From: Octopus sinensis
Taxonomy: Eukaryota
Direction of reading: 5' to 3'
DNA length: 64,000 bases
Assembly (NCBI RefSeq): GCF_006345805.1
Contig: NC_043011.1
Span: 59,656,464 to 59,720,463 of the forward strand
The notes beneath the pieces are model-generated. The model searched no databases and was not told where the DNA came from. It saw nothing but the letters and a program-made list of their open reading frames with translations. The position numbers were made by a program, and so were the translations under genes. This document shows positions 12,858-62,968 of this stretch, in pieces (within the stretch, counting starts at the first letter, position 1; every line of letters begins with the position of its first letter).

Positions 12858-12891
<34 letters not shown>

Positions 12892-13111: not shown

Positions 13112-13145
<34 letters not shown>

Positions 13146-13231: not shown

Positions 13232-13265
<34 letters not shown>

Positions 13266-13310
13266 TGTATGCGTGTATGTATGTATGTATGTGTGTATGC
13301 ATGTGTGTAT
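12520..13310. repeat. (TATG)n array with higher-order 84-136-bp periodicity
   Basis: Marker aaatatgtatgcgtg at 12667, 12751, 12887, 13021, 13141 and 13261. Confidence 0.9.
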
Positions 13311-19830: not shown

Positions 19831-20616
19831 TACTAAAAGGGGTAAACTCCAAGGAAACTGCAGTTAGCAATCATCACCTGAAGCTAAGGGTATTGAAAAT
19901 ATCGATTTCTTCTTTACAATGGTGCTCAGTAAGATATTAAATCGTTCGATATATTACTTGTACATCTTAACAAGACAACATTAGATCGTCGACGGCCTTG
20001 TTTCTCCTATACTAGGACTCACACTCTAATTTCTTCAAGCCACACCCTGCTTACTTATTGCCCAAGGAAACGGAATACTCATCCCTGAACTGCCTCTGAA
20101 CAAGGCTGACAACAACAGCAGCAACAACAGCAACAACGTGTGGTACTTATTTTATCAAACCCAAAGGGCTGAAACACTGAAATCGACCTTGGCGGATTTT
20201 CAGTCTAAAACTTAAAGGAAGATAGCCGAAGGTCGCGAGTTATTTTAACGTCTCTCCATTAATAATATCACACATGGGCAAGTGTCTTCCACCATAGCGT
20301 CGAATTTATTAACGGTATTTTAAAATTACAAGCGTTCTCTATCCATTTTGTTTTCCATACCTACATACATACATACATACATACACACACACATATATAT
20401 ATATATATTTCTTAATTGCTCCCAAGGGGCAAAACATACAGGGGACAAACAAGGACAGACAAAGGGATTAAGTCGATTACATCGACCCCAGTGCGTAACT
20501 GGTACTTTATTTATCGATCCCGAAAGGATGAAAGGCAAAGTCGACCTCGGCGGAATTTGAACTCAGAACGTAGCGGCAGACGAAATACGGTACACATTTC
20601 GCCAGCTCGCCACCTT

Positions 20617-21005
<389 letters not shown>

Positions 21006-21062
21006 ATAAACAACAGTTTGTATCAATAAGTAATTTTTACAGATGTAAGAAACTACAATATA

Positions 21063-21108
<46 letters not shown>

Positions 21109-21552
21109 TCTTTTACACTTTTACTCGTTTCAGCCATGCGGCTGTGGTCATGCTGGAGCACTACCATATACATGATATATTGTAGTTTCTTACATCTGTA
21201 AAAATTACTTATTGATGGAAACTGTTGTTTATATCCTCCCTGATAAGATTGATGCCTTTTTCCACATTATTCTTCCTCTCGCATTCATTTTAATGCATCT
21301 ATCGAAACATACGTCGGTGATATAAATGATTTAAATAACTTCTCGAGACTTTGTCTCCATTTACCATTATTCTTAAGTTCTCCAAAACACGTCTCACACG
21401 CGAGTGTGATTACTAATTTCTTGGGCGCTATGTGCCATTTGGCTGCCTTGTAACTTTTCCTCTGGATCTTTCCTTGTAAACTGAACATATATACATATAT
21501 ATATATATATATATAATATATATACTTTATTTCAAGCAGCAGAAAACTCAAC

Positions 21553-27181: not shown

Positions 27182-27409
27182 GTCTGTGTATCTATCTATC
27201 TATCTGTTGAAGAGCGTAGACTCGAAACGTTAAAGACTTGTTTTATTTATACTTCCTGAGCGCCATACTAATACAATTCTTTGTTTGTATTCCACCTGCC
27301 TTCGTTTTTTGTTTATTTCCGTAAACCTGCCTTCGTCTTTTGTCTATTTTCATAAAGCTTCCCGTTATATATATATATATATATATATATATGTCTGTCT
27401 ATCTATCTA

Positions 27410-27442
<33 letters not shown>

Positions 27443-27485
27443 GTCTGTCTATCTATCTATATATATCTGTCTGTCTATCTATCTA

Positions 27486-27547
<62 letters not shown>

Positions 27548-28169
27548 ATATCTGTCTGTCTATCTATCTATCTGTCTGTCAGCCTGTCTATCAATCTGTC
27601 AGTCTGTATGTCTACATGTATATATGTATGTATGTATGTACGTATGTATGTATGTGTGTACGTATGTATGTACGTATGTATGTGTGTATGTATGTATGCG
27701 CATTATAGCGCATACAAAGCCAGCCCCCGTTTGGCTTTCTTGTCGTTTTGTCGCATTACTTTCTCACGCATTGTTGTAAAACTGATAGAAATGCGCTGAC
27801 GTAATACAATTATATTTTTGTCAATATATATAGATATATAAAAAAAAGAAATTATACATTAAACCATTTCTAAAAAAGATTATTACAGAAAACTGAGGAA
27901 GTTCTCCTGAAAAGAAAATTTACTGCTAAATAAAAGAAGAAAACCCATTAGTTGAGCTTCTCGAAATATGTTAGAATATTGAAAGCCGGATTAATAAATG
28001 AAGTAGATATTAAAAATTATGAATGATGTTCTAGAAGGAAGCTGTTATAGACTTGTACATTTAATTCCTTCCTCTCCTTTAAGAGTTATGTGGACATCAA
28101 AAGGATAAGTGTTGTGGAGAGATTCTCCTCAAAAACCATTGGTAGTTTTTCTTTTATAGTTTGTCCTTC

Positions 28170-30200: not shown

Positions 30201-30431
30201 AACTTTCACTGAATAATTTTTCTTACTCTTTGAAAAAAAGTTTATACTGAAATTATTTTGTGTTTAACTAAAAAAAAGCAAAAACTTTGAAGAAATTGAA
30301 AAAAAAAATTGCTTGAACCGAAATCTGTTTCGAGTTTAATTTTAAAATACATAAATTTTAAGAAATTGTTGCTCTTACTACGATGTCATACCTTCGAATT
30401 AATTATTGCGAATATCGGTGCCCCAAAAATA

Positions 30432-31226
30432 ATGACTCACTACCGAAAAAGAAAACTGAAGCAATCATTGCTGAATTTCCAATCTGATTCATCTAATAAT
30501 ACTAAGCAGAAGAGAATTGGAAACGAAGTTTCGCGGCTCAAGGGAGGTCTTGCAAAGTCTTTGACGCCCTCATTGGATGATCTACGACAACCAGTCGACT
30601 GCCAACCAGTGCAGCCAGTTCTAGCAAAGTTTGATCCAAACATTTATGGAAATCAGAGACGTGACTTCTCGTCAAACTCGTATACTGGTCGTTTATGGTT
30701 AGAGTATTCTCTTTCAAAGACAGCCTTGTCTTGTTTTGCTTCTCGGCACTTTAATACTTCTGCTCAAGCTGATACTTGTTTTATTAAGAATGGATATTCT
30801 AATTGGCATCATGCAAAAAAAAAACAAAAAAAAAACAAAGGTTTAAATAAGCTCGCAAACTCTGCATCCCATATCCAAGCTATGGTGACATGGAAGGAAC
30901 GCCAACAGCGTTTATCCACAACAACTTCCGTGTCTTCAATCTTGCAAAATGATCAGTTGAACAGAAACCGTTATTATATCAGTTTCATTGTTGATATTGT
31001 TCGTTTTCTTTGTGCAAACGAATTACCTTTTCGAGGAAACGGAAATGAAGCTTTTCAGGATCTTTATTCGGAAGATGACACGCAGCCTTGTGGTCTTTTT
31101 ATGAAATTATTCCAGTACACATCAGAGAAAGACTCTAAGCTAATGGAATGTTACAGCACGATTCCAAAAAATGCGACCTACACCTCAGCAGCAATGCAAA
31201 ACGAAATCATCGAATTGTTGAGAAGA
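30432..31226 (+). mobile_element. Truncated hAT-family (ZMYM1/DUF4371-like) transposase, N-terminal half
   Basis: Inside ORF 30309-31283: WLEYSLSKTALSCF (TTF finger), GYSNW, SHIQAM..W, FLCANELPFRG, ATYTSAAMQNEIIELL; ends before the catalytic DDE region. Confidence 0.85.
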
Positions 31227-31659
31227 CCCACTGTCAGCCTCGTGGTCGATGTTTATTTGAAATTATATAAAAATAACCTTTAAAGATTTGGCTGTTATCT
31301 CTAGCATGTAGAAAGACCTTTTAGGCTTAACTATGTGCTTGTTGAAAATCATTAAAAAAAATATTAGAGTCGATACATTCGACTAAAAATTCTTCGAGGT
31401 AATGCCCCAGCATGGCCTCAGTTTAATGATTGCAACAAGTAAAATGAAAATAAAAACGAAATATATCAGAAGTTTTGACCAGATAAGGCATCAAGAAATG
31501 TGAAAAGAAAAACTAAAATTTAACCGAAAAATATAAGTATGGGGCTTTTGTCCACTTTCACACTTTAAGTAGGGGCTTTTGTCTGTACCCCTGTTCCGCA
31601 CCCCCAGTTGCAATTGGCTGGGTATGTGACTGGTTGGAAGCTTGATACATCCTGAAAAT

Positions 31660-34174: not shown

Positions 34175-34475
34175 CTCATCATCATCGTTTAACGTCTGCT
34201 TTCCGTGCTAGCATGGGTTGGACGGTTCGACCGGGGTCTGGGATTGCAGGAGGCTGCACCAGGCTCCAGTCTGATCTGACAGTGTTTCTACAGCTGGATG
34301 CCCTTCCTAATGCCAACCACTCCAAGAGTGTAGTGGGTGCTTCTTACGTGCCACTGGCACAGGTGCCAGGGGAGGCTGGCAGCAGCCACGATCGGTTGAT
34401 GCTTTTTACATGCCAACGGCACAGAAGCCAGTGAAGGCAGCGCTGGCATCGGCCACGTTCGGATGGTGCTTTTTA
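34175..34475 (-). mobile_element. RTE 3'UTR-only copy
   Basis: Same 3'UTR sequence and (cat)n tail. Confidence 0.85.
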
Positions 34476-34909
34476 CTAGCCGCCCACAGTGGAATTCCTG
34501 TCGTAGATCCAAAGGAAATATATCAGAAGCATGGATGACACCAGGTAGCCCAAAACTGAACGTGCTTTACTCAACATACTGACATATACTCATTAGTCCC
34601 CAAAATTACATCTTAACATCATGAGTACAACACTTGAACTGCTAGGCAAAATATTCTTCTCTATTCTAGGCACAAAGCCCAACATTTTTGGGGAGGGGGT
34701 CAGTGCCAGTCGATTAAATCAACACCAGCATGCAACTGGTGCTTAATTTATCGATTCCGAAAGGATGAAAGGCTAAGTCAAGACTTCGGCAGAATTTGAA
34801 CTCAGAACTTTAAGTTTCTGCCAGCTCACCGTCTTGAACAGCAAAATATTAAAAGAAAAACACCCAATGAAACTCTGGTATTTAAAAAAAAATGATAAAA
34901 AATAAAAGT

Positions 34910-34915
34910 TTTATT
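34910..34915 (-). terminator. Polyadenylation signal AATAAA of the securin-like gene
   Basis: Plus-strand tttatt at 34910-34915, followed on the minus strand by a U-rich tract. Confidence 0.5.
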
Positions 34916-34968
34916 TTACAGAAAAGTTTAAAAGAGGAGAGTTGCAAAGAGAGAGGTTTAGGGTTCGT

Positions 34969-35102
34969 TTAACACCCAACATCTGAGTCCGACAGGAGGA
35001 CAAGTTCATCGATGTCTGGTATTGATAGATCTTCGGCTTCAGGTTGGACGGACTGGATTTCAGTGGTAGAGTATAAAGCTTTCTCAAAGATATCACCGGT
35101 TT
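34969..35102 (-). CDS. Securin-like gene, terminal coding exon ETGDIFEKAL...SDSDVGC*
   Basis: Very strong acceptor ttttctttttcttttttttag|; phase 1 matches the previous exon; TAA at 34969-34971; AATAAA about 53 nt downstream. Confidence 0.8.
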
Positions 35103-35553
35103 CTAAAAAAAGAAAAAGAAAATGGGAGAATGATAGTTTGCACAAATGCAATAACGAAAAGTATAAGCAAACATGACCAAAAAAACTCAAAGGATTTTGT
35201 ACCTTTGAACCCTTAGCTATTTAACCCAGCCATATCAGATTGAAATATTTCACCTGTTTTAGGTTCAAACTGGCCAGATCCAGCCTTTCACACCTACCCT
35301 ACAATGTCATTCTAAACATAAACAGTCAAAAACCATTGAAATCTCCAAACTAAAAGATAATGTATGATTTATTCAAAATAATCTTTACGATTATAGGCAA
35401 GGCACAAGGCCTGAAAAAGACACCATTCAAACGTGATTGTTACCAACGTCGCCTTACTGGCACCTGTGCCATGTGCACCATACGGCATAGTGGTTAAGAG
35501 CGCAGGCTACTAACCCAAAGATTCTGAGTTCGATTTCAGGCAGTGACCTGAAT

Positions 35554-35785
35554 CATCATCATCATCATCGTTTAACGTCCACTTTCCATGCTAGCATGGG
35601 TTGGACGATTTTGACTGAGGGCTGGAGAACCAGATGGCTGCACCAGGCTTCAATCTTGATCTGGCAGAGTTTCTACAGCTGGATGCCCTTCCTAACGCCA
35701 ACCACTCCGAGAGTGTAGTGGATGCTTTTACGTGCCAGTCAGGCGATACTGGCAACAACCTCGCTCGAATCTTTTACACATGCCA
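35554..35785 (-). mobile_element. RTE 3'UTR-only copy inserted in the linker of a tRNA-head SINE
   Basis: Same 3'UTR; flanked by SINE head sequence on both sides. Confidence 0.85.
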
Positions 35786-35879
35786 GCTACTAACCCCAAC
35801 ATTCCGTGTTCGATTCCAGGCAGTGACCTGAATAATAATAAGAAGAAATAAAATAAAGCAGTAAATAGAAAACTGCTTC

Positions 35880-36110
35880 AAGAGATGAGGGGCAAGCAAC
35901 TGAGATTTCTTGGTCATGTGATGAGGAAAGATGATCTGGAGATTTTAGTGATGTCCAAACAGATTAAAGATGATTAAGGAAAAGGATGATATGAAGGTTA
36001 AGCTTGAGGAACTGGGTGGAAGAGGTTCCATGGCCTGAATCACTTTCCACACTTTGCCATGAAGTGGAACTGCTACAGCAAAACAAAGAACAGAGAATTT
36101 GTGACAGGAC
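35880..36110 (+). mobile_element. Decayed RTE LINE C-terminal fragment
   Basis: KQLRFLGHVMRKDDLEILVM motif. Confidence 0.6.
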
Positions 36111-36167
36111 ATGATTAGTTATGTCCTACATTCTGGACATGACATCTAAGGAAGAAATAAGCCATAC

Positions 36168-36323
36168 CTGAAAGTATTGGCAACTCTTCATCGTCCGAGA
36201 TTCCGTGGTCCGAATCACTTACTCCACTTTGCCAAATTTGAAAACAAGATGACTTCCAGCTTAAAAGTTTGTCTAAGTAGGAACTGGCTCGCTCTTTCTT
36301 GGGCCAAATATCTTCATAGGTGT
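36168..36323 (-). CDS. Securin-like gene, exon DTYEDIWPKKERASSYLDKLLSWK...DDEELPILS
   Basis: Acceptor ttttcatattttttcag|; donor TCAG|gtatgg; 156 nt open, phase 1/1. Confidence 0.85.
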
Positions 36324-36809
36324 CTGAAAAAAATATGAAAACCATAATTATAAACAGTAAACAGAAACAAAAAAAAAAATCATGTTTTTAAACCATGCCA
36401 GGTGTGGTAGTGTGGCTATGTGGTTAATAAGTTCAACCAGCAACCATGTGATTTCAGGTTCAATCCCACAGTGTCTTGGGCAAATGTCTTCTACTACAAC
36501 CCTAGGTTGACCAATGGCTTGTGAGTGACAATGGTAGATGGAAACAGAATAGAAGTTCATAGAGAGAGCATGTGTGTGTGTGTGTGTGCATGTAGAGGGA
36601 GGGGGTCAGACTGTTGGTGCTATATTAGAGATATTTGCCAAAGGTGGGGCCAAACAGTGGGACTGAAACCAAGACGTAAATGTCAGGAAGCAAGCCTGTC
36701 AACCAGACAGCCATGACTGTAAGGCTGCCAATGCATTTGTCTAATACAATTCACTCACAAGCTGATGGTGAACCCAAGGTATTCTATAGTGGGAGTGAAC
36801 CTGACACCA

Positions 36810-37330
36810 CATCATCATCATCATCGTCATCATTTAGCGTCCGTTTTCCATGCTAGGATGGGTTGGACGGTTCAACTGGGGTTTGTGAAGCCGGAAGGCT
36901 TCATCAGGCCCAGTCAGATCTGGCAGTGTTTCTACGGCTGGATGCCCTTCCTAACGCCAACCACTCCGTGAGTGTAGTGGGTGCTTTTTACGTGCCACCT
37001 GCACAGGTGCCAGACGAGGCTGGCAAACGGCCACGAACGGATGGTGCTTTTACGTGCCACCGGCACGGGGGCCAGGCAAGGCTGGCAACGGACACGAACG
37101 GATGGTGCTTTTACGTGCCACCGGCACGGGGGCCAAGCGAGGCTGGCAACGGACATGAGCGGATGGTGCTACGTGCCAACGGCACGGGGGCCAGGCGAGG
37201 CTGGCAGCGGACACAAACGGATGTTGCTTTTATGTGCCATCGGCACGGAGGCCAGACGGGGCGGCGCCGACTACGATCGGATGGTTCGCTTAACCACAGC
37301 TGCAATTTCCACTGATGTTGATCGGCCTCA
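36810..37330 (-). mobile_element. RTE 3'UTR-only copy with about 6 units of the ~60-bp VNTR
   Basis: The ggtgcttttacgtgcc motif recurs near 36981, 37043, 37104, 37165, 37222 and 37283. Confidence 0.85.
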
Positions 37331-37475
37331 ATTTTGGTTCTGCTTTCTGATATCTGATTTGATTTGGTTTGATTTTGATTGTTCTCACATGGTAGCAAAA
37401 TGGATTTCTTAAGTACAGACCAATGGCTTGATATAACACAGTACTGACTCCAATAATAATTTGTGCTTTCATTAC

Positions 37476-37505
37476 CTGACAGTCTGCAAATGTTTGTTTC
37501 AATTT
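37476..37505 (-). CDS. Possible 30-nt cassette micro-exon of the securin-like gene (EIETNICRLS)
   Basis: Donor TCAG|gtaatg; acceptor ttcctcttgctggccttgtgatag|; symmetric phase 1/1, so it can be included or skipped without a frameshift. Confidence 0.3.
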
Positions 37506-37830
37506 CTATCACAAGGCCAGCAAGAGGAATGTTGGCCAAAATGTGAACAATTAAGGGGAATATACTATTGACCAATTTGTTAAAAATGTCAATGGAAAAT
37601 ATATGGCTAACACTCAAGCTGACAATACAGAAATATCTGAAGTAATTTTTTAAAAATCAAGTCGTCATTTCACATGGAATTTCATCTTCATACCACTGGC
37701 TCTGATGAGGCTTATATAAGGGAATTGAATTGTTTGTATATCAAAAAATGATGAATATGATGATGACCAATTTCATTCTTGGACATCTAGACATTTTGAA
37801 TGAAAACAACTGATATCAAATAACATTTAC

Positions 37831-37954
37831 CGTTTTCCTGTGGCAGCCTGTGTGCTTTCTCAATATCATCATGGAAAGCCAGATTCTTACTTGTTGTCGT
37901 CAGAGAACTTTTGACTGGTTTCTCAAAACCTTTCTTTGGTTTGAAATCTTGTTT
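37831..37954 (-). CDS. Securin-like gene, exon KQDFKPKKGF...FHDDIEKAHRLPQEN
   Basis: Acceptor tttctgcttttcttgttacag|; donor AACG|gtaaat; 124 nt, only one open frame, phase 0 to 1; carries a DIE motif like the separase-binding motif of securins. Confidence 0.8.
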
Positions 37955-38060
37955 CTGTAACAAGAAAAGCAGAAATATTTAGAACTGACATTTTTTTTAG
38001 AAATTCTTATAAATAACAACAACAATGGTAGCACCAGCTCAAAGACAAAGAACAACTTAC

Positions 38061-38253
38061 CAATCCATTCTCTGAAATACTGGCTAAAGCACGACGATTC
38101 TTCTTCTTCTTACAAGATTCTTTTTCAGGATTTTGCTCTCCAAGAAAACCTGGTTTTGACAATGGAGTTTGTCCGTATGCACGTTTTTATTAACATCCCC
38201 CAGAGCACGGCGAGGCGTGGCAAAGTTCTCTTGGAGTTCTTTCTGGTTAGAAG
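38061..38253 (-). CDS. Securin-like gene, exon with two D-boxes (RRALGDVN, RRALASISEN); apparent 1-nt frameshift at T5 run 38184-38188
   Basis: Acceptor cttttattgacag|CTTC; donor TTG|gtaagt. The 5' half reads SNQKELQENFATPRRALGDVNK. The 3' half reads KRAYGQTPLSKPGFLGEQNPEKESCKKKKNRRALASISENGL in another frame. One extra A in the A5 run joins them and restores both splice phases. Confidence 0.75.
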
Positions 38254-38816
38254 CTGTCAATAAAAGTCTAAAATTAAAACCTTGACCAATAATTAGTTGC
38301 AGAATTTCATATTACAGTCGTTATTTTTATTTTGTCTCATTTTCAGTAGCCATGATAGTAATGCTTGGCTAACAAATAGTTTGGGGTTCAATGCCAGGGT
38401 GTGACACCTGAGTCAAGTGTCTTCTATAACTGCCCCACCATTAGTAATGCCTTATCAGTGAATTTTGAAGACAGAAACTTAGTGAAAGCTCACCACGCAG
38501 AAAGGTGAGTATGGATTAGATGGGTGCTGATGAAGGGGCAACCACAACCCCCAAAATATGGCATAGATACTCATTACCCATTTTTGTCTTTGATCTCAGT
38601 GTTTGGTTACATCTGACATCTTGATATAAAACGTTGCAGCAAAAATCAATGCTGTCTAGAATGATCTTTAGAAATAAGCTTAACAAAATAATGTAAAGTG
38701 CACTGCTAACACAGTAGAACAAGTTATTGACTTGTAAAAACATTTAACATACTTTATAGTATGTTATGGTTACATGACAAAACACCTCATACCTACAAAT
38801 CATTAATATAAACATA

Positions 38817-39120
38817 GTGGAGGCACATGGCCTAGTGGTTAGAGCAGCGGACTCGCGGTCGAGGGATCATGGGTTTGAATTTCAGACCAGGCGATGTGTG
38901 TGTTTATGAGCAAAACACCTAAGTTCAACGCGGCTCCGGCAGAAAGTAATGGCGAAACTTCTGCTGACTCTTTCGCCACCACTTTCTCTCACTCTTTCCT
39001 CCTGCATCTAGCAGCTCACCTGTGACGGACCGGCATCCCATCCAGGTTGGGAACCTATACGCCAAGAAACCGGGAAATCGGCCCTTATGAGCCAGGCGTG
39101 GCTCAAGAAGGAACAAGCAA
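38817..39120 (+). mobile_element. Full-length tRNA-SINE family C
   Basis: gtggaggcacatggcctagtggttagagc (A box)...gggtttgaatttc (B box)...ggctcaagaaggaac tail; other copies at 9238-9466, 50755-51030 and 52630-52938 (minus). Confidence 0.9.
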
Positions 39121-39606
39121 CAATATAAACATACCAGCTCCAGAAATGCACTTAATATGTAAACTGGTACATCCAGTAACCTAACACCCCTGTTTGGGGT
39201 GGCTATTTAAGCAATATGTTCAAGGATGTTTAGTGGGTTAGGTGGATGCTGATGAAGGAGCAAATACCCCCATTTTTCACCTTCACTCTCATTGCTTGTT
39301 TACATCTGACATCTTGTATACAAAATGTTGTAGCAAAAAAAATCAGTGCTGGCTTCAATTTCTATAGAATTATCTGTAGAAATAAGCTTAACAAAATAAT
39401 GTACAAAGCACTGCTAACACAGGAGGACATGCTATAAAAACATGGCTGTGTGGTAAGTAGTTTGCTTACCAACCACATGGTTCTGGGTTCAGTCCCACTG
39501 CATGGTACCTTGAGCAAGTGTCTTCTACTATAGCCTTGGGCCAACCAAAGCCTTGTGAGTGAATTTTGTTGATGGAAACTGAAAGAAGCCCGTCGTGTAT
39601 GTATGT

Positions 39607-40222
39607 ATGGAGAGTTAGCTAAATGAGAACGACCTCCACATAAACCAAAAAAGAGGTATAAGGACTTGCTGAAGGCTTCCTTAAGAGATGCTTGCATCTC
39701 TCCTGATACATGGGAAGGCATAGCTATTGCTCATAGCAGGTGGGGAAGGATTGTGTACGAGGGGACAGCCACTTTTGAGAAATCTCGAGTTGCACATGAG
39801 AAAGTAAGGAGGGATGTCAGGAAGGGCATCGCTGTTACACTTCCAGAAGGGAAGGGTCTTCCTTTGATTCTGACATGCAGAGTCTGTGCATGACTCTGCC
39901 TCAGTAAAGCTGGACTTAAGAGTCATTTTCGTAGTCATAAAGCAAGACAGATGAGTGACAACCTGGCCACTGGTGGTGGTGTATCACACCATACTAATCA
40001 TATCTGTCGGGCATGTGGAAGAGAGTGTAATTCGGCAGGAGGACTTAAACGACATGCAAAGGTACATGAAGCCCAGTTACAACTATTACCGGTAAAGGTA
40101 TTAGTTGCCAATTCTGTACAAGACATTGTAGATCTTTAGCTGGGCTAAAAAGTCACATTCGATCACACCACCAGTTAAGCTTCGTGCAATGGCCATACTC
40201 GATAACGAGGGGGCAGCCATAA
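39607..40222 (+). mobile_element. 3' end of a different RTE (BovB-like) LINE with two C-terminal C2H2 fingers and a microsatellite tail
   Basis: YGELAK*ERPPHKPKKRYKDLLKASL...CRVCA*LCLSKAGLKSHFRSH...CRACGRECNSAGGLKRHAKVH; followed by (TA)n(GA)n. Confidence 0.8.
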
Positions 40223-40249
40223 TATATATATATATATATATATATATAG

Positions 40250-40285
<36 letters not shown>

Positions 40286-40287
<2 letters not shown>

Positions 40288-41710
40288 TGCCGAATGTCAA
40301 CCCAACAGAGGGACCAGCTATCTGAATTGACAATACCTTGGTAGATAAAGCAATTAAGAGTATGAAGACAGCAAAAGCCCTCATCCCGTCAGAATCACCA
40401 CAGAGATGCTTAAAATATCTGGCAGCATAGGGTATAGCCTAGTCACCCGTATAGTCAACTAGGTGATACATGAAGGAGTCACATCCAATGACTGGTGTAG
40501 CAACACCATAGTTAACTGCTACAAAGGTAAAGGTGATTCATTAGATACAAATAATTACAGAGGCATCAAGTTGTTGGATCAGGTAATGAAAGTCACGGAG
40601 AGGGTCAAGCCCAGATAATTAGGGAGAGAGTTAGTTTAGACGAGATGCAGTTTGGGTTTGTGCCAGGGAAAAGCACTACTGATGCTATATTTCTGGTAAG
40701 ACAGCTGCGGTAAAAATACTTAGCCAAAGATAAACCACTGTACCTGGTTTTCGTTGACATGGAGAAAGCCTTTGACAGGGTCCCCTGATCCCTTACCTGC
40801 TGGTCAATGTGCAAACTAGGGATAGATGAATGGTTAGTGAGAGCTGTACAAGCCATGTACAGGGATGCTGTCAGTAAGGTGAGGGTTGGCAAAGAATACA
40901 GTGAAGAATTCTGGGTAGGGGTAGAGGTTCACCAAGGATCAGTCCTCAGCCCCCTTTATTCATTATAGTCCTCCAGGAAATAACAGAGGAATTCAAGACA
41001 GGATGTCCCTGGGAGCTTCTCTATGCTGATGTCCTTGCTCTAATAGCTGAGTCACTATCAGAACTAAAGGAGAAGCTTCGGGTGTAGAAGCAAGACCTAG
41101 AATCAAAGGGCCTTAGGGTCAACCTAGCAAAAACCAAAGTCTTAATAAGTAGGAAGGCAGACAAACCACAAATCTCTTCAGGTAGATGGTCCTGCTCAGT
41201 CTGTAGAAAAGGCATAGGTAGAAACTCCATAAGATGTACCCAGTGTAAGCTATGGACACATAAGAGGTGCAGCAATATCAAAGGAAGGCTAACTGGGAAG
41301 ATAGTTTTTGTGACAAATGCTCAGGTGCTATAAACACTGAAAATATGCAGAGAACAGAGAGAACTACAAGTAGTTGATAGCTTCTGTTACCAAGGTGACC
41401 AAGTCAGTAGCAGGGGTGGATGCTCTGAAAGTGTAGCTGCTACAATAAGAATAGCCTGGGCAAAGTTCAGAGAACTACCTCTGCTGGTGAGAAAGGGCCT
41501 CTCGTTCAGAGTAAAAGGCAGACTGTATGACACATGTGTGCGAACAGTAATGCTATATGGCAGTGTAACATGGACCTTGACTGCTGAGGACATGTGTAAG
41601 CTTGCAAGGAATGAAGCCAGTATGCAAGCACCCTGAGAGAAAAGTGTGCAAGAGAGATGACTACACTGGTATGATCATGTGTTGCGAATAGATGAGGACA
41701 GACATGCAAA
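40286..41710 (+). mobile_element. Decayed RTE-clade LINE reverse transcriptase (same family as 44004-45202)
   Basis: Broken frames give NNYRGIKLL, MQFGFVPGKSTTDAIF, FVDMEKAFDRVP, VHQGSVLSP, LLYADV, then CSVC..CTQC..H..C; many stops and indels. Confidence 0.92.
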
Positions 41711-41724
41711 CACGATAAAGTGAA

Positions 41725-41978
41725 CATTCATCGTCATCATTATCATTTAACGTCCGTTTTCCATGCTAGCATGGGTTGGATGGTTCGACTGGGCTCTGGC
41801 AAGCCAGGAGGCTGCACCAGGCCCAGTCTGCTTTGGCAGTGTTTCTACAGCTGGATGCTCTTCCTAACGCCAACCACTCCGTGAGTGTAGGGGGTGCTTT
41901 TTATGTGCCACCGGCACAGGTGCCAGGCGAGGCTGGCAACGGCCACGATCAGTTGGTGGTTTTTACGTGCCACGGCAC
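41725..41978 (-). mobile_element. RTE 3'UTR-only copy
   Basis: Same 3'UTR sequence. Confidence 0.85.
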
Positions 41979-42594
41979 AATAATTATAGTTCCAGATAAT
42001 CTCTGGGATGAAACTTAAATCTACAATTATATATCTTTCTGAAATGGCTGTTAACAAAACCCTTGACATCAACTGTTAAATCTGCCCCAAGTGTGTTCAA
42101 AGCGAAAAGTATGAAGAGGCTTTCGCTCTCCTTTGCTCTTCCAATTCACTTATTGTTGTGAACGAAAGTTCTTTCAGCAAAGCAGTAATGTGTATAACCA
42201 TCCACATTTCATGAAAGACTTCATTAAAAATACAGGGTCTCTCTCACTCCCCACCAACTCCACTCTCTCAAACTCAGACTGAATTTGAGCTACTTACTGA
42301 CAAGAGCTCAACTCAACCATCTAAAGTTCAACACAAACCCTTTAATGTTGAAACCAGCCATATCTGGTTTTAAATACTCTACAAGTTTTACGCTCATTCC
42401 AGCCAGATCCAGCCTCTCACACCTACCCTACAATGGCATTCTAAAAATTAACAACCACATCATTGAAAAAGCTATGAGGTAACGGATGATTAATTGAAAA
42501 CAATTTGAATAAATAAGCAATTACATTTGATAGCATAATTTGAACACCAGCGGGTAAAACCTTTTGCAGTTACTCTGGTCATATCCAGCCCAAG

Positions 42595-42935
42595 TGAAGG
42601 CACATGGCTCAGTGGTTAGAGTGTCAAGCTTACGATCGTGAGGTTGTGAGCTCGAATCCTGGACCGGGCTGCGTGTTGTGTTCTTGAGCAAGACACTTTA
42701 TTTCACGTTGCTCCAGTTCATTCAGCTGTAGAAATGAGTTGTGACATCACTGGAGCCAAGCTGTATCGGCCCCTTTGCCTTTCCCTTGGATAACACTGGT
42801 GGCATGGGGAGGGGAGGCTGGTATGCATGGGTGACTGCTGGTCTTCCATAAACAACCTTGCCCAGACGTGTACCTCGGAGGGTAACTTCCTAGGTGCAAT
42901 CCCATGGTCATTCATGACCGAAGGGGGTCTCCCAT
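42595..42935 (+). mobile_element. Full-length tRNA-SINE family D
   Basis: ggcacatggctcagtggttagag...ctcgaatcc...ggtcattcatgaccgaagggggtct; other copies at 55868-56205 and 57208-57445. Confidence 0.85.
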
Positions 42936-43451
42936 GCAGCCCAAATATTCTACCTGTTTTATGTTCAAACCAGCCAGGTCTGGCTTCTCACACCTAACCT
43001 ACAATGTCATTCTAAAAATTAACAATCACATCGTCAAAATCTCAAAGCTATGAGATAATCCAGGATTATATATTGAAAACAACGAGAATAAATAAGCATT
43101 ACATTTAATAATCTAAATGCAAAAGAGTTAAATGAAATGAAATTACAAAGAGGGGGGGGGGCCTGTGTGTTGAATAAACTTGTTTTGTGATCACATGGTT
43201 TTGGCACCTTGGGCAAGTGAAGGCTGTAATATCATAGCCCCATGCTGATCAATGCATTCAGTAGATGGAAACTGTGTGGAAGCTTGTCATGCCTGACAAC
43301 CGGTGTCAGTTTGTTTACATCCTTGTAACTTAGCAGTTCAGCAAAAGAGTGCCACAGAATAACAAACTTATGAAAAGAGAAAGTTGAAGGCAATGCCCCA
43401 GCATGGCCTTGGTCCAATGACTGAAACAAGTAAAAGATAAATGGTAAATAC

Positions 43452-43524
43452 CTGTTCTGCCCTTTAAATTGGCCGAAGACCCAACATTTTCTTTGGCCAA
43501 AAACCCAAAGCGTATTGACGTCAT
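43452..43524 (-). CDS. Securin-like gene, first coding exon (MTSIRFGFLAKENVGSSANLKGRT), contains KEN box
   Basis: Acceptor ttgttttttctttggcag|CTTCACT-ATG (exon starts 43531); donor ACAG|gtattt; 73 coding nt, ends in phase 1. Confidence 0.75.
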
Positions 43525-43685
43525 AGTGAAGCTGCCAAAGAAAAAACAAATCAACCAAATTAATTAATGACCAGCCAATAATTAAGATATACATTCAGAC
43601 AGGCTTGACGAAGGCTATAGACACAGCTACTATATAAACGAGCAAATCACATTATTTACATTTGACAGATATTTTTCCTCATCTT

Positions 43686-43878
43686 GTGGCACGTAAAAAG
43701 CACCCACTACACTCACGGAGGGGTTGGCGTTAGGAAGGGCATCCAGCTGTAGAAACATTGCCAGATAAGACTGGAGCCTGGTGCAGCCTTCTGGCTTCCC
43801 AGATCCCCGGTCGAACCGTCCAACCCATGCTAGCATGGAGAACGGACGTTAAACGATGATGATGATGATGATGATGAT
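43686..43878 (+). mobile_element. RTE 3'UTR-only copy with (GAT)n tail
   Basis: Same 3'UTR; interrupts the hammerhead-SINE tail. Confidence 0.85.
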
Positions 43879-44003: not shown

Positions 44004-45202
44004 GCTTGGGAATAATAAACACTGAAAATACGCAGAGACCATCTTCCGCCACATTCCAGGGAGAAAAACTAGAAATAGTTGATAGCTTCCGTTACCTTGG
44101 TGACCAAGTCAGCAGCTGGGGCGGGTGCACTGAAAGTGTAACTGCTAGAGTAAGAATAGCCTGGGCAAAGTTCAGAGAGCTCTTATCTCTGCTGGTGACA
44201 AAAGGCCTCTCGCTCAGAGTAAAAGGCAGATTGTATGACGCATGTGTACGAACAGCTATGCTACATGGCAGCGAAACATGGGCCGTGACTGCTGAGGATA
44301 TGCGTAAGCTCGCAAGAAATAAAGCCAGTATGCTCCAATGGATGTGTAATGTCAGTGTTCATACTCGACAGAGTATAAGTACTTTGAGAGAAAAGTTGGA
44401 CCTAAGAAGCATCAGTTGTGGTGTGCAAGAGAGACGTTTGCACTGGTATGGTCATGTGGTGAGAATAGATGAAGATAGTTGTGTGAAAAAGTGCCACACT
44501 CTAGTGGTTGAGGGAACCTGTGGAAGAGGTAGACCCAGGAAAACCTGGGACGAGGTGGTGAAGCACGACCTTCGAACGTTAGGTCTTACTGAGGAAATGA
44601 CTAGAGACCGAGACCTATGGAAGTATGCTGTGCGTGAGAAGACCCGGCAGGACAAGTGAGGCCATAATCCCGGGGCCTACACCTGGGATGTAGCCAGCCC
44701 ACTTATGCATTCCTTTCCTTCTTGGGACACAAAACTCCACTTGTGAAGACCTGTTGAGGCAAGTGAAAATCAAAATCGTAATCTGTCAACATCAATGGAA
44801 TCTGTAGCTGTGATACCAGTGCCGGTGGCACGTAAGAGAACCATCCGAACGTGGCCGTAGCCAGCGCCGCCCGACTGGCCTCCGTGCTGGTGGCACGAAA
44901 AAAGCACCATCCGACCGTAGCCGTTGCCAGCTTCGTCTGGTCCCCGGGCCGGTGGCACGTAAAAGGCACCATCCGATCGTGGCCGTTTGCCAGCCTTGTC
45001 TGGCACCTGTGCCAGTGGCACGTAAAAAGCACCCACTACACTCACAGAGTAGTTGGCGTTAGGAAGGGCATCCAGCTGTAGAAACACTGCCAGATCAGAC
45101 TGGGCCTGGTGCAGCCTTCTGGCCTCCCAGACCCCAGTTGAACCGTCCAACCCATGCCAGCATGGAAAGCAGACGTTAAATGATGATGATGATGATGATG
45201 AT
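44004..45202 (+). mobile_element. 5'-truncated RTE-clade LINE: C-terminal part of the RT ORF (to stop at 44659), 3'UTR with ~60-bp VNTR, (GAT)n tail
   Basis: ORF 44006-44659 has VDSFRYLGD, AWAKFREL, LHGSETW, RLHWYGHVVR, GRGRPRKTW; tail acgttaaat(gat)n. Confidence 0.95.
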
Positions 45203-54539: not shown

Positions 54540-55199
54540 TAATATATATATATATATATATACTGTGGAGTGAATTGGTAGACGGAAACTGAAAGAAGCC
54601 TGTCGTATATATGTATATATATATGTGTGTATATGTATCTGTGTGTGTTTGTGTGTCTGTGTTTGTCCCCCTAGCATTGCTTGACAACCGATGCTGTTGG
54701 GTTTACGTCCCCGTCACTTAGCGGTTCGGCAAAAGAGACCGATAGAATAAGTACTGGGCTTACAAAGAATAAGTCCCGGGGTCGATTTGCTCGACTAAAA
54801 GGCGGTGCTCCAGCATGGCCGCAGTCAAATGACTGAAACAAGTAAAAGATATAAAAGATATATATATATACATATATATACATATATATACATACACATA
54901 TATATATTATATCTATAGTATATATATATAGATATATATATATCTATATATATATATATATATATATATATAATGTATGTATATCTATGTGAAATAGAAG
55001 ATGAATAATCTGTAGTAGATTATCAAAAGTTTAACCGATACCTTAGTAGCAAAAAATCCAGCAGTGAACAGCAGAATGAAGAATGAAATAAAACGATTCT
55101 GTTCAATCTGCGTTCAGCTCCATTTCTTCATTCACCAATATGTTATGTATAATATAATATATATATATATATATATATATAGATATATATATATATGTA

Positions 55200-55230
<31 letters not shown>

Positions 55231-55399
55231 GTGTATATACATATATAAGTATGTATATATATATATATTATATATTATATATATATATATGTATGTATAT
55301 ATATATATATATATTATATATATATAGGTATTATATATATGTATATATATATATACATATATATATGTATGATATATATGTATATGTGTGTGTGTGTAT

Positions 55400-55750
55400 G
55401 TATGCATGTATGTATGCGCATGCCATCGAAACGTGCCATCCCGCGCCTCTAGAATCCTACACTCCTTTTTCCCGCACTTAAGCCTAAGCGTCCATCTTAG
55501 CTTTAGCAGCAGGAGCGGCGGCGGCAACAACAAACAACAAACAGCTGCAAAGAGAACCGAGAAAGCAAGTGTGTAAAGTAGAACCATGGTGCGCATGCGT
55601 GAAGAGCCTTTTAAAGAGAGGAAATGGCATGGCCGGCGGGCGGGCGATGATCGCAGACGGATGTTACCAATCAAACGATGCATCGCCTGCAATGATAACA
55701 AACACACGCAGCTGCACCACAGCGTGATTTATATGCATTCTGCTCCGTCC
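55400..55750. promoter_or_regulatory. CpG-rich promoter-like island
   Basis: Unique CpG-rich patch in AT-rich DNA with GGGCGGGCG (GC box), CCAATC, GCGCATGCG (NRF1-type), TTTCCCGC at 55468-55475 (E2F-type), TTTAAA (CHR-like), CCATCTT (YY1-type); pyrimidine-rich 5'UTR-like run on the minus strand. Confidence 0.55.
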
Positions 55751-59841: not shown

Positions 59842-60127
59842 TTTAAATGCCTACAACCTTAGTATGTTGACATCTATAAGCAATGAAAATGAGATTCACT
59901 TCTGACCATAGGCTGAAACAGCTGTAAGAAGTAATTTTTAGGATTTCATTAATTTATACTATGACTTTTAAAATCTGTATTTGTATTATTATCTTATCTA
60001 TTGATTTATATAAAATTTTTGTATGCTTTTGATGTTCTCATTTGTAAAATGAATAAATAATCCAACATTATAAGATCCGTAAGTTGATGAACAAACCAAA
60101 TTTGTTTCTCCATTTCTTATTTGTATT

Positions 60128-60198
<71 letters not shown>

Positions 60199-60539
60199 GG
60201 TGGGATACTTTCAGTTTTCCGTCTTACCGAATCCACTTACAAAGCTTTGGTCGGCCAGAGACTATAGTAGAGAACACTTGCCCAATTGTGCCACGCAGTG
60301 GGAATGAATCCAGAACCATGTGGTTGGGAAGCAAGCTTCTTATCACACAGTCACTCTTGCACCTATGTATTTCCTCTTCTTCTTTCCACCAGCTTTCTCC
60401 CTTTTTCCTTTTTCTTTTCAATGAAGGACTAGCGTCCGAAACGTTAAAAGACTCTTTCCCATTTCGTTTCAAGCTTTTTTCCAGTAACACTTTTGTTAAA
60501 ACTTGTCCCGTTTCTTGCGTTTCCTCTTGTTTCTGCTCA

Positions 60540-60600
60540 ATCACCATCATCATCATCATCATTAGCATCACCACCACCACCAACCACCACCACCACCACC

Positions 60601-60631
<31 letters not shown>

Positions 60632-60860
60632 CCACCACCACCACCACCACCATAACCATCGCCGTCGTCTCCTCCTCCTCCTCCTCATCATCATCATCAC
60701 CATCATCATCACCACAACCATCATCGTCATCATCATCATCATCATCACCACCACTACCATCACCATCATCACCATCCTCCTCCTCCTCCTCATCATATAT
60801 ATATTATATATATATATATGCGTGTGTGTGTGTGTTTGTGTGTGTGTGGGTGTGTATACC

Positions 60861-60904
<44 letters not shown>

Positions 60905-61267
60905 CCTTTACGGTATATTTGAAGCATTTTCCTTTGCAGAATTAAAGCCAGTCGCGTAAAAATAGTGTATGGATGGGTGCGTGGATGGATGGATGGGTAT
61001 GGATGGATGGATGTGGATGCTTGTATGATGTATATATGTATTAGTTGTATTATGTATTAGTATGTGTGCACGTATATTATATATATATATATCTGTATGT
61101 ATATGTATGTATATATGTATATACGTCTATCTATCCATGTATGCTTGTATATAAATGTGTATGTTTGTACGCACACATGTATGTATATATATATATATAT
61201 ATATGTACGTGTGTATGTTACAGAGGAAGCAAAAACAAAACAATCATAAAAACACATCTACAGTAGC

Positions 61268-61301
<34 letters not shown>

Positions 61302-61890
61302 GCAACAACAACATCACCGGAGAGGATAATTAATCAAACGAACTGAAGACGTTTGAGTTTTAAATTAAATCTCATTTTCTCTTGTTTTCGGTGATGTCAG
61401 TTTGGGAAATGGCTCCTGGTTGAGATTGGTTTTAATAACAATAATGGGTTCGGATTGGCACATTCGGTGGGTGTGGTGTAGCGCCGCAGCCCATGTGCCG
61501 GCGTCGTCGTCGCCTTCCTCCTCCTCTCCATCATCATCCTCCTCTCCATCCTCCTCCTCATCATCATCACCATCACCATCACCACCAATATCCTCCTCCT
61601 CCTCCTCATCATCATCATCATCATCCTAATCATCATCACCATCCTCCTCCTCCTCATCATCACCACCACCATCATCATCGCCATCACCATCACCACCACT
61701 ATCATCATCATCATCATTATCATCATCATCATCATCATCATCATCAGTCATCATCATCATCATCATCATCAGTCATCATCATCATCATCATGTCATCATC
61801 ATCATCATCATCATCACCATCATCATCAATATCATCATCATCATCATCATCATCTTCACCATCATCATCATCATCATCATCATCATCGTC
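60540..61890. repeat. (CAT/CAC/CCT)n trinucleotide repeat blocks (60540-60795, 61510-61890)
   Basis: Direct reading; source of the poly-H/S/I ORF artefacts. Confidence 0.95.
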
Positions 61891-62968
61891 TTTGTACCTC
61901 CATGTTGCTTTCGTGCTATTTTACAAAGTATATAATACATGCATGCACATAGATGCATATATACATGTACACACGTATATAGATATACATGCATGCACAT
62001 ATATTCGCATGTATATATATATATGTCTGTGTATGTTTGTATGTGTGTGTATACATACATGCAGACATACATACGTACATATATATATGTATATATGTAC
62101 ATGTGTATGTGTATATACATATATACAAATACGTATATACATGCTCATACATATATACATACACATACATATTGCATACACGTAGATATATAAATACACA
62201 CACAAACGCAAACATTAAAGCGACGCAGAAATTAGGCATATATGCACACACACAGACACACACACACAAGAATATATCATTCATCACATAGACATGCATA
62301 TATATATACACACACATTTACGTTCACAATAAATCACACAGGAAAGCCCACACACACACTCACATACTCACATGTACATACATACATACATATACATAAC
62401 ACACAACACATATATATATATATATATATATTATATTATATATAATATATACATATATATGGGCTATGTTGTGAGTGTATATATACAATATATAATTATA
62501 TATACATATATGTATATATGTATTTTATGCATGTATGTGTGTGTGTGTGTGTGTGTGCTGTTGTGTGTGTGTGTGTGTGCGTGTGTGTGTGTATTCATAT
62601 ATACACGTAGAAATACAGTCACACATATTCACATATGCACACGTGTACCTCTTCGAGCACAAAAAATAGCTTGAAAATCAATCCGAGCCTGTTAAACAAC
62701 AGACCACTCCCTCCAACGACAACAACAAAATCAATCAATAAATTAAAAGATAAAAATTGAATGACAGACATACAGACAGACAGCTTGAAAGAAAAGAAAG
62801 AAGGGAGGCGAAAAAGAAGTATAAAACGAAAGGAAAGGTGGTAAAGGCGGATGAAAGACGGAATGTAAACGAAAAAGAAAGAAAACGGAAGAAGGAAAAG
62901 AGAAAAGAAAGAAAGCAAGAAAGAAAGGGAGAAAGGAAAATGGAAGAAAAGTAAAAAAGGTTATAATT

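What the first reader, a model, noticed from the sequence alone, without database searches (positions are those of the whole stretch)
34890..43531. Hidden securin-like gene in a cephalopod-type genome
None of the ORF-track entries shows this protein. Spliced, it has the APC/C-substrate and separase-inhibitor layout: KEN at residues 11-13, a CDK site TPRR, D-box RRALGDVN, a basic region, DDIEK (cf. human securin EIEK, yeast Pds1 DIE) and an acidic tail. Securins diverge so fast that invertebrate orthologues are often unannotated, so this may be an unrecognised lophotrochozoan securin.
Basis: partly seen in the sequence, partly recalled or inferred. Interest (0 to 1): 0.7.

Follow-up and report, generated by a model that had tools for sequence, protein, structure and literature searches.

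The report
Octopus securin gene, frameshifted as assembled
This is a real five-exon octopus gene for the cephalopod version of securin, the protein that holds back chromosome separation. It is an expected housekeeping gene that databases list only as "uncharacterized", and this copy has a one-base frameshift in exon 2.

Summary
On the minus strand, five exons with canonical AG/GT borders (CDS 43524-34969) encode a protein of about 226 aa. It has KEN (residues 11-13), TPRRALGDVN (37-46), a basic middle, DDIEK (118-122) and an acidic tail.

The same exon structure is annotated in Octopus bimaculoides as "uncharacterized protein LOC106873580" (226 aa, 90% identical), so the gene is unnamed rather than unannotated.

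A profile of the cephalopod proteins recovers a family in molluscs, an annelid, a priapulid and a coral. Two bivalve members are named "Securin" in UniProt. One of them (scallop XP_021355525.1) was already linked to vertebrate securins by PSI-BLAST in Cromer et al. 2019.

- Profile-profile comparison with mammalian securins gives probability 97%, E 6e-11, with the motifs in the same order.
- The only significant PDB hit is human securin.
- The family has an almost invariant Glu in a DIE patch and never has Arg at the P1 position.
- The Pfam Securin model does not match.

Caveat: exon 2 in the window lacks one base (near 38175/38174) relative to two other octopus sequences. The orthologous reading frame therefore stops after 80 codons. 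This could be an assembly error or a real lesion; I could not test which.

Verdict: a new member of a known kind, of modest interest.

The parts
43452..43524 (-). Exon 1 (coding part, 73 nt; ATG at 43524-43522), residues 1-24
   Evidence: Same length and borders as exon 1 of the O. bimaculoides model.
43486..43494 (-). KEN box (residues 11-13), an APC/C degron
   Evidence: The Glu of KEN is invariant and the Asn nearly invariant in the 13-sequence family alignment.
43525..43690 (-). Conserved promoter-proximal or 5'UTR block. It includes an inverted CCAAT box (ATTGG, 43579-43575) and a TATATA element (within 43639-43626).
   Evidence: About 90% identical to O. bimaculoides until a SINE begins in the window. 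Regulatory function is inferred, not tested.
38061..38253 (-). Exon 2 (193 nt; 194 nt in O. bimaculoides)
38189..38218 (-). TPRRALGDVN: a minimal CDK site (T37-P38) abutting D-box 1 (RRALGDVN, residues 39-46)
   Evidence: P38, R39, A41, L42 and G43 are invariant in A7.
38168..38179 (-). Frameshift site. One base is missing between 38175 and 38174 relative to O. bimaculoides and an independent octopus contig.
   Evidence: Alignment A2; single gap in the CDS alignment.
38084..38086 (-). Premature TAG reached by the as-assembled reading frame (80 codons)
38112..38113 (-). Window-specific cryptic donor (CTT|GTAAGA). It would restore the frame to exon 3 and give a 208-aa product lacking D-box 2.
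   Evidence: The GTAAGA arises from a base found only in the window (TGT against TGC). Use of this donor is not shown.
38067..38096 (-). Second D-box-like motif RRALASISEN (residues 78-87), conserved in cephalopods
37831..37954 (-). Exon 3 (124 nt): basic region and pseudosubstrate patch
37856..37870 (-). DDIEK: candidate separase pseudosubstrate. E121 takes the P4 position and His (Tyr in O. bimaculoides) takes P1.
   Evidence: E121 is invariant in A7. P1 is never Arg in the 24 of 28 family members that carry the Glu. The patch aligns to human 113-EIEKFFP (motif from PMC6858450).
36168..36323 (-). Exon 4 (156 nt): YEDIWPKKERASSYLDKLLSWKSSC module
   Evidence: This is the most conserved block of the family. 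W153 is invariant in A4.
36298..36309 (-). IWPK: a hydrophobic-Pro motif 15-17 residues after the pseudosubstrate Glu, aligned to the human securin 130-LPE docking motif
   Evidence: P138 is nearly invariant. LPE role from PMC6858450.
34969..35102 (-). Exon 5 (coding part, 134 nt including TAA 34971-34969): acidic tail with LSIPDIDEL
   Evidence: P211 of the 'LP' is invariant in A7. A permissive hhalign run places it on human DVELPPV (low confidence).
34910..34915 (-). AATAAA polyadenylation signal, about 55 nt after the stop codon
   Evidence: Read directly from the sequence.

Best explanation
The locus is the octopus orthologue of securin (PTTG1 / Pds1 / Cut2 class). Securin is a small, intrinsically disordered inhibitor and chaperone of the cohesin protease separase.

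Inferred mechanism, by homology:
- The C-terminal two thirds lie along separase. The DIE(K)xH/Y patch sits in the active site as a non-cleavable pseudosubstrate, with Glu at P4 and no Arg at P1.
- The downstream [I/V][W/F/M]P motif occupies the exosite that cohesin's LPE motif would use.
- The N-terminal KEN box and one or two D-boxes let APC/C-Cdc20 ubiquitinate the protein at metaphase. Its destruction frees separase.
- The Thr-Pro immediately before D-box 1 may allow CDK phosphorylation to tune that destruction.

Shown here: the gene structure, the orthology, the family, and statistically supported homology to vertebrate securin. Inferred: separase binding, APC/C-dependent turnover and CDK control.

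As assembled, the window copy has a 1-nt deletion in exon 2. I judge an assembly or haplotype error more likely (about 0.6) than a real inactivating lesion, because the rest of the gene shows purifying selection.
For: Gene model:
- Five exons with canonical splice sites.
- Identical exon structure (73/194/124/156/134 nt), reproducing the NCBI protein exactly in O. bimaculoides.
- dN/dS 0.23 with dS 0.195, and only one gap in 681 nt.

Family:
- 39 hits at E<=1e-3 in 1.84 billion representatives.
- Members come from cephalopods, bivalves, gastropods, a chiton, an annelid, Priapulus and a coral.
- They share the layout MASLxFQxxxDKEN / GKxF / TPRxALGDVN / DIExM(H/Y/P) / DDFEDIWPKxERxSTYxxKLxSWRPxC / acidic tail with LP.

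Link to securin:
- hhalign probability 97.1, E 5.9e-11, with controls.
- The only significant PDB sequence hit is human securin, E 0.0064.
- Two members carry the UniProt name 'Securin'.
- Cromer et al. 2019 connected family member XP_021355525.1 to human and mouse securins by PSI-BLAST.

Functional signatures:
- An invariant Glu in a conserved patch, which that paper treats as the hallmark of securins.
- P1 is H/P/Y/F/N/D and never Arg.
- The Pro of the LP-type motif sits at the spacing reported for human securin.
- AlphaFold gives pLDDT 52 and pTM 0.14, mostly coil with three short helices, as expected for a disordered inhibitor.
Against: - The Pfam Securin model (PF04856) does not match the octopus protein or any of 28 family members, even at E<=1.
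- Direct BLASTP against human securin is weak (E 0.017, D-box region only).
- Much of the hhalign score comes from the N-terminal half, where KEN and D-box are short motifs that can arise convergently (N-halves E 6e-11, C-halves P 0.005).
- The LP-type motif reads WPK rather than LPE.
- Four panpulmonate gastropod members lack an alignable DIE patch.
- No interaction, expression or degradation data exist.
- The window copy is frameshifted.
Confidence: 0.85

Rival explanations
1. The window copy is a genuine null allele or recent pseudogene of securin. In this reading the 1-nt deletion in exon 2 is real, the transcript carries a premature stop (80 codons) and is degraded, and function is supplied by the other allele or another copy.
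For: The deletion is in the sequence as given and is absent from two other octopus sequences. It is not a clean homopolymer miscount under the most parsimonious alignment (deletion of an A plus one substitution).
Against: Everything else looks functional:
- All ten splice sites are intact.
- dN/dS is 0.23 and there is no other indel or stop.
- The promoter-proximal block is conserved.

An alternative reading is that the true sequence is ACG GGA CAA (two synonymous changes) with GGG read as GG. That would be a typical homopolymer error.

Securin-family genes appear to be single copy in the relatives seen here.
Confidence: 0.25
2. The deletion is real but compensated. This species splices exon 2 at the window-specific donor CTT|GTAAGA (38114|38113) and makes a 208-aa securin that keeps KEN, D-box 1, DDIEK and the tail but lacks the second D-box.
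For: That splice gives an uninterrupted ORF of 627 nt. The GTAAGA is created by a base unique to the window.
Against: - The canonical donor TTG|GTAAGT is intact and stronger.
- The 20 residues between the frameshift and the cryptic donor would be an out-of-frame translation of a segment conserved across cephalopods (GQTPLSKP...).
- There are no transcript data.
Confidence: 0.07
3. The family is a different APC/C substrate that resembles securin only through convergent KEN and D-box degrons, and it does not regulate separase.
For: - No Pfam Securin match.
- Most of the profile-profile score lies in the degron-bearing N-terminal half.
- The strongest family motif (ERxSTYxxKLxSWRPxC) has no confidently aligned counterpart in vertebrate securin.
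Against: - The post-D-box halves still align in the pseudosubstrate/LPE register, above all 40 shuffles.
- The Glu is invariant and P1 is never Arg.
- No other PDB protein (sororin, geminin, cyclins, shugoshin and so on are all in that library) scores better than E 2.7.
- No Pfam family recurs among the members.
- There is an independent published PSI-BLAST link.
Confidence: 0.08

Closest known systems
Vertebrate securin (PTTG1; Pfam PF04856; PDB 7NJ1 chain B)
   Same: - Similar length (about 200-230 aa).
- Predicted to be disordered.
- N-terminal (D/A)KEN.
- GKxF (present in most family members, but QKEL in the octopus protein).
- R(K/R)ALGxVN D-box.
- Basic middle.
- (D/E)IE(K) patch with a non-Arg P1.
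- DFE(D/S) followed by a hydrophobic-Pro motif about 16 residues after the Glu.
- Acidic tail with (I/V)xLP.

All elements are in the same order.
   Different: - Below the Pfam threshold.
- WPK in place of LPE.
- Has a strongly conserved ERxSTYxxKLxSWRPxC block, with an invariant Trp, that does not align confidently to vertebrates.
- Thr-Pro directly precedes the D-box.
- Cephalopods carry a second RRAL D-box-like motif.
Mollusc 'Securin' entries (Mizuhopecten yessoensis A0A210QL71 / XP_021355525.1; Sinanodonta woodiana A0ABD3VQ49)
   Same: They belong to the same family. The cephalopod profile hits them at E 9e-13 and 6e-9, and every motif is shared. The scallop protein is the published bridge to vertebrate securins.
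   Different: Only about 27-32% identical to the octopus protein. They have a longer C-terminal LDxSLDI...G.L.L tail that octopus lacks, and no second D-box in scallop. No member of the family has been tested experimentally.
Fungal, fly, worm and plant securins (Pds1, Cut2, Pimples, IFY-1, PATRONUS)
   Same: The same functional logic is inferred: degrons at the N-terminus, and a conserved Glu-containing pseudosubstrate patch in a disordered chain.
   Different: No sequence similarity was detected here. According to Cromer et al. 2019, these proteins are not retrieved even by iterated searches from vertebrate or mollusc securins.

Membership tests
Securin (separase inhibitor class, homologous to PTTG1) | N-terminal APC/C degrons: a KEN box and an RxxLxxxN D-box | tested here: met
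   KEN 11-13 and RRALGDVN 39-46. Conserved across the family. Chance expectation 7e-5.
Securin (separase inhibitor class, homologous to PTTG1) | Small, largely unstructured protein | tested here: met
   226 aa. AlphaFold2 with a 13-sequence alignment gives mean pLDDT 52 and pTM 0.14, with only three short helices.
Securin (separase inhibitor class, homologous to PTTG1) | Conserved patch with an invariant Glu acting as pseudosubstrate (Glu at P4, no Arg at P1) | tested here: met
   E121 is invariant in A7. In the 24 of 28 members that carry the Glu, P1 is H10/P5/Y4/F2/N2/D1 and never R. The patch aligns to human EIEKFFP. Four gastropod members lack the patch.
Securin (separase inhibitor class, homologous to PTTG1) | [quoted passage not shown] 2019) | tested here: inconclusive
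   [I/V/L][W/F/M/L]P, with a nearly invariant Pro, lies 15-17 residues after the Glu and is aligned to human L130-P131. The third residue is K/R/S rather than E.
Securin (separase inhibitor class, homologous to PTTG1) | Statistically supported sequence homology to experimentally proven securins | tested here: met
   hhalign probability 97.1, E 5.9e-11, with shuffle controls. Human securin is the only significant PDB hit, E 0.0064. Published PSI-BLAST link through family member XP_021355525.1.
Securin (separase inhibitor class, homologous to PTTG1) | Binds and inhibits separase; destroyed by APC/C-Cdc20 at anaphase onset | not testable with these tools
   There is no multimer prediction and no experimental data here.
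Pfam PF04856 'Securin sister-chromatid separation inhibitor' | Match to the family HMM at or above the gathering score (22 bits) | tested here: not met
   No hit for the octopus protein at E<=10. No hit for any of 28 family members at E<=1. Only a marginal nematode relative reaches 14.6 bits. I therefore do not file it as a PF04856 member as that model now stands.
Orthologue of O. bimaculoides LOC106873580 | Same exon-intron structure and high identity over the full length | tested here: met
   90% aa identity over 99% of the length. All five exons have identical borders, with 87-95% nt identity. The exception is a 1-nt deletion in exon 2 of the window.

The most novel reading that the evidence does not exclude
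Non-vertebrate animal securins, from coral to octopus, form one recognisable family that current domain models miss. Their best-conserved element is not the pseudosubstrate but a DDFEDIWPKxERxSTYxxKLxSWRPxC module with an invariant Trp, partly predicted to be helical. This module could be an ancestral second anchoring site on separase, or a site for another partner, that has been lost or remodelled in vertebrates. Cephalopods, oysters and abalone have independently added a second D-box. A less likely variant is that the frameshift is real and is rescued by a lineage-specific cryptic donor.
Probability: 0.3. Interest if true: 0.45.

Novelty: new member of a known kind. Interest (0 to 1): 0.33.

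Why it matters
- Securin is essential cell-cycle machinery but evolves so fast that most invertebrate copies are labelled "uncharacterized". Naming the cephalopod gene gives octopus and squid cell-cycle, oocyte-meiosis and regeneration studies a proliferation marker and a handle on separase control.
- The alignment from coral to octopus could seed a broader securin model than Pfam PF04856.
- It also points to a conserved Trp-containing module that is worth testing for separase binding.
- For genome curation, it flags a probable single-base error (or a real lesion) in this assembly that would hide the gene from automatic annotation.

Tried and rejected
- Pfam scan of the repaired protein and of 28 family members: no Securin hit and no recurrent family.
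- phmmer of the single protein against PDB sequences: nothing.
- BLASTP against human securin: only a weak D-box match.
- The human PTTG1 database search listed only mammals in the 120 rows shown, so it gave no bridge sequences.
- The word-indexed search with the family profile added little beyond molluscs, Priapulus and a coral.
- hhalign of the coral sequence alone against mammalian securins: not significant.
- Exact look-ups of the window's frameshifted exon-2 ORF and exon-4 ORF in public assemblies: not on record. Whether the deletion is real could therefore not be tested.
- Rfam and ARAGORN on the whole window: nothing.
- Literature searches for securin in octopus, molluscs or other marine invertebrates found no functional study.
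- The structural papers PMC5385133 and PMC5302053 were not held.
- I did not run a structure search with the model, because a pLDDT of 52 would give meaningless matches.
- Rejected: that this is a chance concatenation of ORFs. The orthologous annotated model and dN/dS 0.23 rule that out.
- Rejected: that it is a cyclin, geminin, sororin or shugoshin N-terminus. Those families gave no hits in the Pfam or PDB searches.


Full report
**What is in the sequence**

The feature lies on the minus strand. A three-frame scan of 34800-43700 and explicit splicing give five coding exons:
- 43524-43452 (73 nt, with the ATG at 43524)
- 38253-38061 (193 nt)
- 37954-37831 (124 nt)
- 36323-36168 (156 nt)
- 35102-34969 (134 nt, ending in TAA)

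Every exon is bounded by AG and GT. An AATAAA lies at 34915-34910.

- KEN at 11-13
- TPRR at 37-40
- RRALGDVN at 39-46
- DDIEK at 118-122

It has a basic middle (net +10 over residues 47-117) and an acidic tail (net -17 over residues 161-226). A KEN box plus a full D-box near the N-terminus appears in only 7e-5 of composition-matched shuffles.

**The frameshift**

The literal splice is 680 nt, which is not a multiple of three. I aligned exon 2 with O. bimaculoides and with an independent octopus contig (Logan SRR11869391). The window reads CATAC-GGACAAA where the others read C(G/A)TACAGGGCAAA. One base is missing between 38175 and 38174.

In the orthologous exon structure the frame then runs into TAG at 38086-38084 after 80 codons. 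An uninterrupted 208-aa ORF does exist if a donor found only in the window (CTT|GTAAGA, 38114|38113) is used. It translates about 20 conserved residues out of frame and removes a second D-box-like motif (RRALASISEN, residues 78-87) that is conserved in cephalopods.

Apart from this one gap, the CDS is 92.8% identical to O. bimaculoides, with dS 0.195 and dN/dS 0.23. All splice sites are intact, and about 165 nt upstream of the ATG are conserved.

I therefore favour an assembly or haplotype error (about 0.6) over a real lesion. I could not test this: exact look-ups of the window's ORFs in public assemblies found nothing.

**Orthologues and family**

A database search with the frame-corrected protein found three proteins:
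- O. bimaculoides 'uncharacterized protein LOC106873580' (226 aa, 90% identity, full length)
- a hypothetical protein from Argonauta hians (247 aa, 52% identity)
- an exon-2 genomic fragment

The O. bimaculoides locus (CM046618.1) has the same five exons (73/194/124/156/134 nt). Spliced, they reproduce the NCBI protein exactly. The gene is therefore annotated in a sister species but not named.

There the gene spans 2.8 kb. In the window it spans 8.6 kb, because introns 1, 3 and 4 are swollen by repeats (5198 against 794 nt, 1507 against 708 nt, and 1065 against 509 nt).

A profile of the two full-length cephalopod proteins, searched with HMMER against 1.84 billion representatives, gave 39 hits at E<=1e-3. 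The full-length hits are 183-313 aa. They come from oysters, scallops, mussels, Solemya, a chiton, abalone, caenogastropods, heterobranchs, the annelid Dimorphilus, Priapulus and the coral Pocillopora. Almost all are labelled 'uncharacterized' or 'hypothetical'. Two (Mizuhopecten A0A210QL71 and Sinanodonta A0ABD3VQ49) are called 'Securin' in UniProt.

The alignments show one ordered architecture:
- MASLxFQxxxDKEN
- GKxF
- TPR(R/K)ALGDVN
- a lysine-rich linker
- (D/E)(D/E)IExM(H/Y/P)
- DDFEDIWPKxERxSTYxxKLxSWRPxC (W153 invariant in A4)
- an acidic tail containing an invariant Pro in an (I/V)xLP motif

**Is it a securin?**

The Pfam model PF04856 does not match the octopus protein or any of 28 family members. 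BLASTP against human securin is weak. Four other lines of evidence do support the link.

1. Profile-profile comparison of the family (A4) with 16 mammalian securins (A5) gives probability 97.1 and E 5.9e-11 over 118 columns. KEN, GKxF, the D-box, DIE against EIEKFFP, and DFED-I-WP against DFESFDLP align in order.
   - Thirty column-shuffled versions of the securin alignment score at most 16, and the reversed alignment scores 13, against 75 for the real comparison.
   - The portions after the D-box, compared alone, again find the DIE/EIEK register (score 23.5, P 0.005; 40 shuffles score at most 18.8). The link therefore does not rest only on the degrons.
   - A permissive alignment extends in order to the C-terminal LP motif.
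2. An unbiased hmmsearch of all PDB sequences with the family profile returns human securin (7nj1_B) as the only significant hit (E 0.0064; the next is 2.7).
3. Cromer et al. 2019 (bioRxiv 10.1101/606285) report that the scallop protein XP_021355525.1 is connected to human and mouse securins within a few PSI-BLAST iterations. That protein is P0127 in the family found here.
4. The same paper states that securins are defined functionally. Their only shared sequence features are KEN and D boxes plus a conserved patch with an invariant Glu. That is exactly the pattern seen here: E121 is invariant in A7.

**Mechanistic reading**

Rosen et al. 2019 (PMC6858450) define the human pseudosubstrate as 113-EIEKFFP. 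Changing 118-FP to RE turns securin into a substrate. [quoted passage not shown]

In the family found here, the residue three positions after the Glu (P1) is H, P, Y, F, N or D and never Arg. A nearly invariant Pro preceded by a bulky hydrophobic residue lies 15-17 residues after the Glu and aligns with human L130-P131.

AlphaFold2 predicts a mostly disordered chain (pLDDT 52, pTM 0.14) with short helices at 140-151, 185-196 and 213-217. This fits a protein that folds onto its partner.

My inference is as follows. The C-terminal part lies along separase, with DIE(K)xH/Y blocking the active site and WP blocking the substrate exosite. KEN and the D-box(es) drive APC/C-dependent destruction. The conserved Thr-Pro next to D-box 1 may make destruction sensitive to CDK. 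The last point rests on general knowledge of yeast Pds1 and was not tested here.

**Rivals**

- A real null allele or pseudogene (0.25), or a cryptic-donor isoform (0.07). These concern the state of this copy, not its identity.
- An unrelated APC/C substrate that converged on the same degrons (0.08). This is disfavoured by the alignment of the post-D-box halves, the P1 pattern, the absence of any other PDB or Pfam match, and the published link.

**Novelty and score**

Every animal is expected to have a securin. The mollusc family has already been tied to vertebrate securin in passing in the literature, and the octopus orthologue is already a gene model. The finding is therefore a new member of a known kind.

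The points of interest are these:
- Cephalopod securin is unnamed.
- Pfam misses the whole family, from coral to octopus.
- The family carries a conserved Trp-containing module and, in cephalopods, a second D-box.
- This assembly carries a frameshift that would block annotation.

Interest: 0.33.

Noticed in passing
window 38254-43451, 36324-37830, 35103-36167 (introns 1, 3, 4): These introns are 2-6.5 times longer than in O. bimaculoides (5198 against 794 nt, 1507 against 708 nt, 1065 against 509 nt). Interspersed repeats account for the difference. The gene spans 8.6 kb here and 2.8 kb there.
   Followed up: partly
window 31968, 34201, 35584, 36846, 41759 (+) and 43817, 45144 (-): Seven copies of a SINE-like element share the core TTCCATGCTAGCATGGGTTGGACG, with none expected by chance. 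The core is often preceded by (CAT)n. Three copies carry tandem arrays of 61-67 nt units (34336-34476, 36980-37285, 44819-45033). Three of the copies lie inside the securin introns and one lies just upstream of the promoter block.
   Followed up: partly
window 39627-40190 and 40460-41640 (+ strand, inside intron 1): These are decayed retrotransposon remnants. One is a C2H2 zinc-finger fragment (weak Pfam zf-C2H2 hits, below the cut-off). The others are reverse-transcriptase-like stretches (FGFVPGKSTTDAIF..., HQGSVLSPL...) broken by stops and frameshifts. The fragments were too short for Pfam to call RT.
   Followed up: partly
window 44006-44659 (+): An intact 217-aa ORF closely resembles the C-terminal part of the decayed element in intron 1 (RIAWAKFRELL...VKGRLYDACVRTAMLHGSETW...). 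It may be a younger copy of the same LINE family. It has no Pfam hit.
   Followed up: partly
window 30309-31283 (+): A 324-aa ORF has a sub-threshold match to DUF4371 (E 6e-5, 23 bits against a cut-off of 32). That domain is seen in hAT-type, transposase-derived proteins. It is probably another mobile-element relic.
   Followed up: partly
window 43525-43690 (-) and exon 1: The 165 nt upstream of the ATG are about 90% conserved with O. bimaculoides. They contain an inverted CCAAT box (ATTGG 43579-43575) and a TATATA element. Exon 1 itself contains CCAAT followed by TTTAAA. This arrangement resembles the CCAAT/CHR promoters of G2/M genes. That is only a recollection, not a test.
   Followed up: no
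Alignment A4 (P0125 oyster, P0131 abalone, cephalopods): Second copies of the D-box (TPRKALGSINKD in Saccostrea, RPRKALGDVNG in Haliotis, NRRALASISEN in cephalopods) sit at different positions. This suggests independent duplications of the degron.
   Followed up: no
Alignment A4: P0146, P0152, P0154, P0159 (Aplysia, Biomphalaria and two unnamed relatives, P0154 and P0159, from Logan/JGI contigs): These gastropod members keep the IFPRxERLSTY...SWRPPC block but have no alignable DIE pseudosubstrate patch. Either the patch has diverged or the alignment fails there.
   Followed up: no
window 12265-13400, 20400-21200, 27280-27800, 55100-55700, 60000-62300: Long microsatellite and low-complexity tracts, such as (TATG/CATA)n, (TA)n and homopolymeric-codon runs, generate many spurious long ORFs in the ORF list. 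A (TA)17(GA)15 tract lies inside intron 1 at 40222-40285.
   Followed up: no
L002 (Logan SRR11869391), protein P0003: The public gene call for this octopus exon-2 contig reads through an in-frame stop as Q and runs from intron into exon. It is a gene-calling artefact, and it shows how the exon is misrepresented in automated protein sets.
   Followed up: partly
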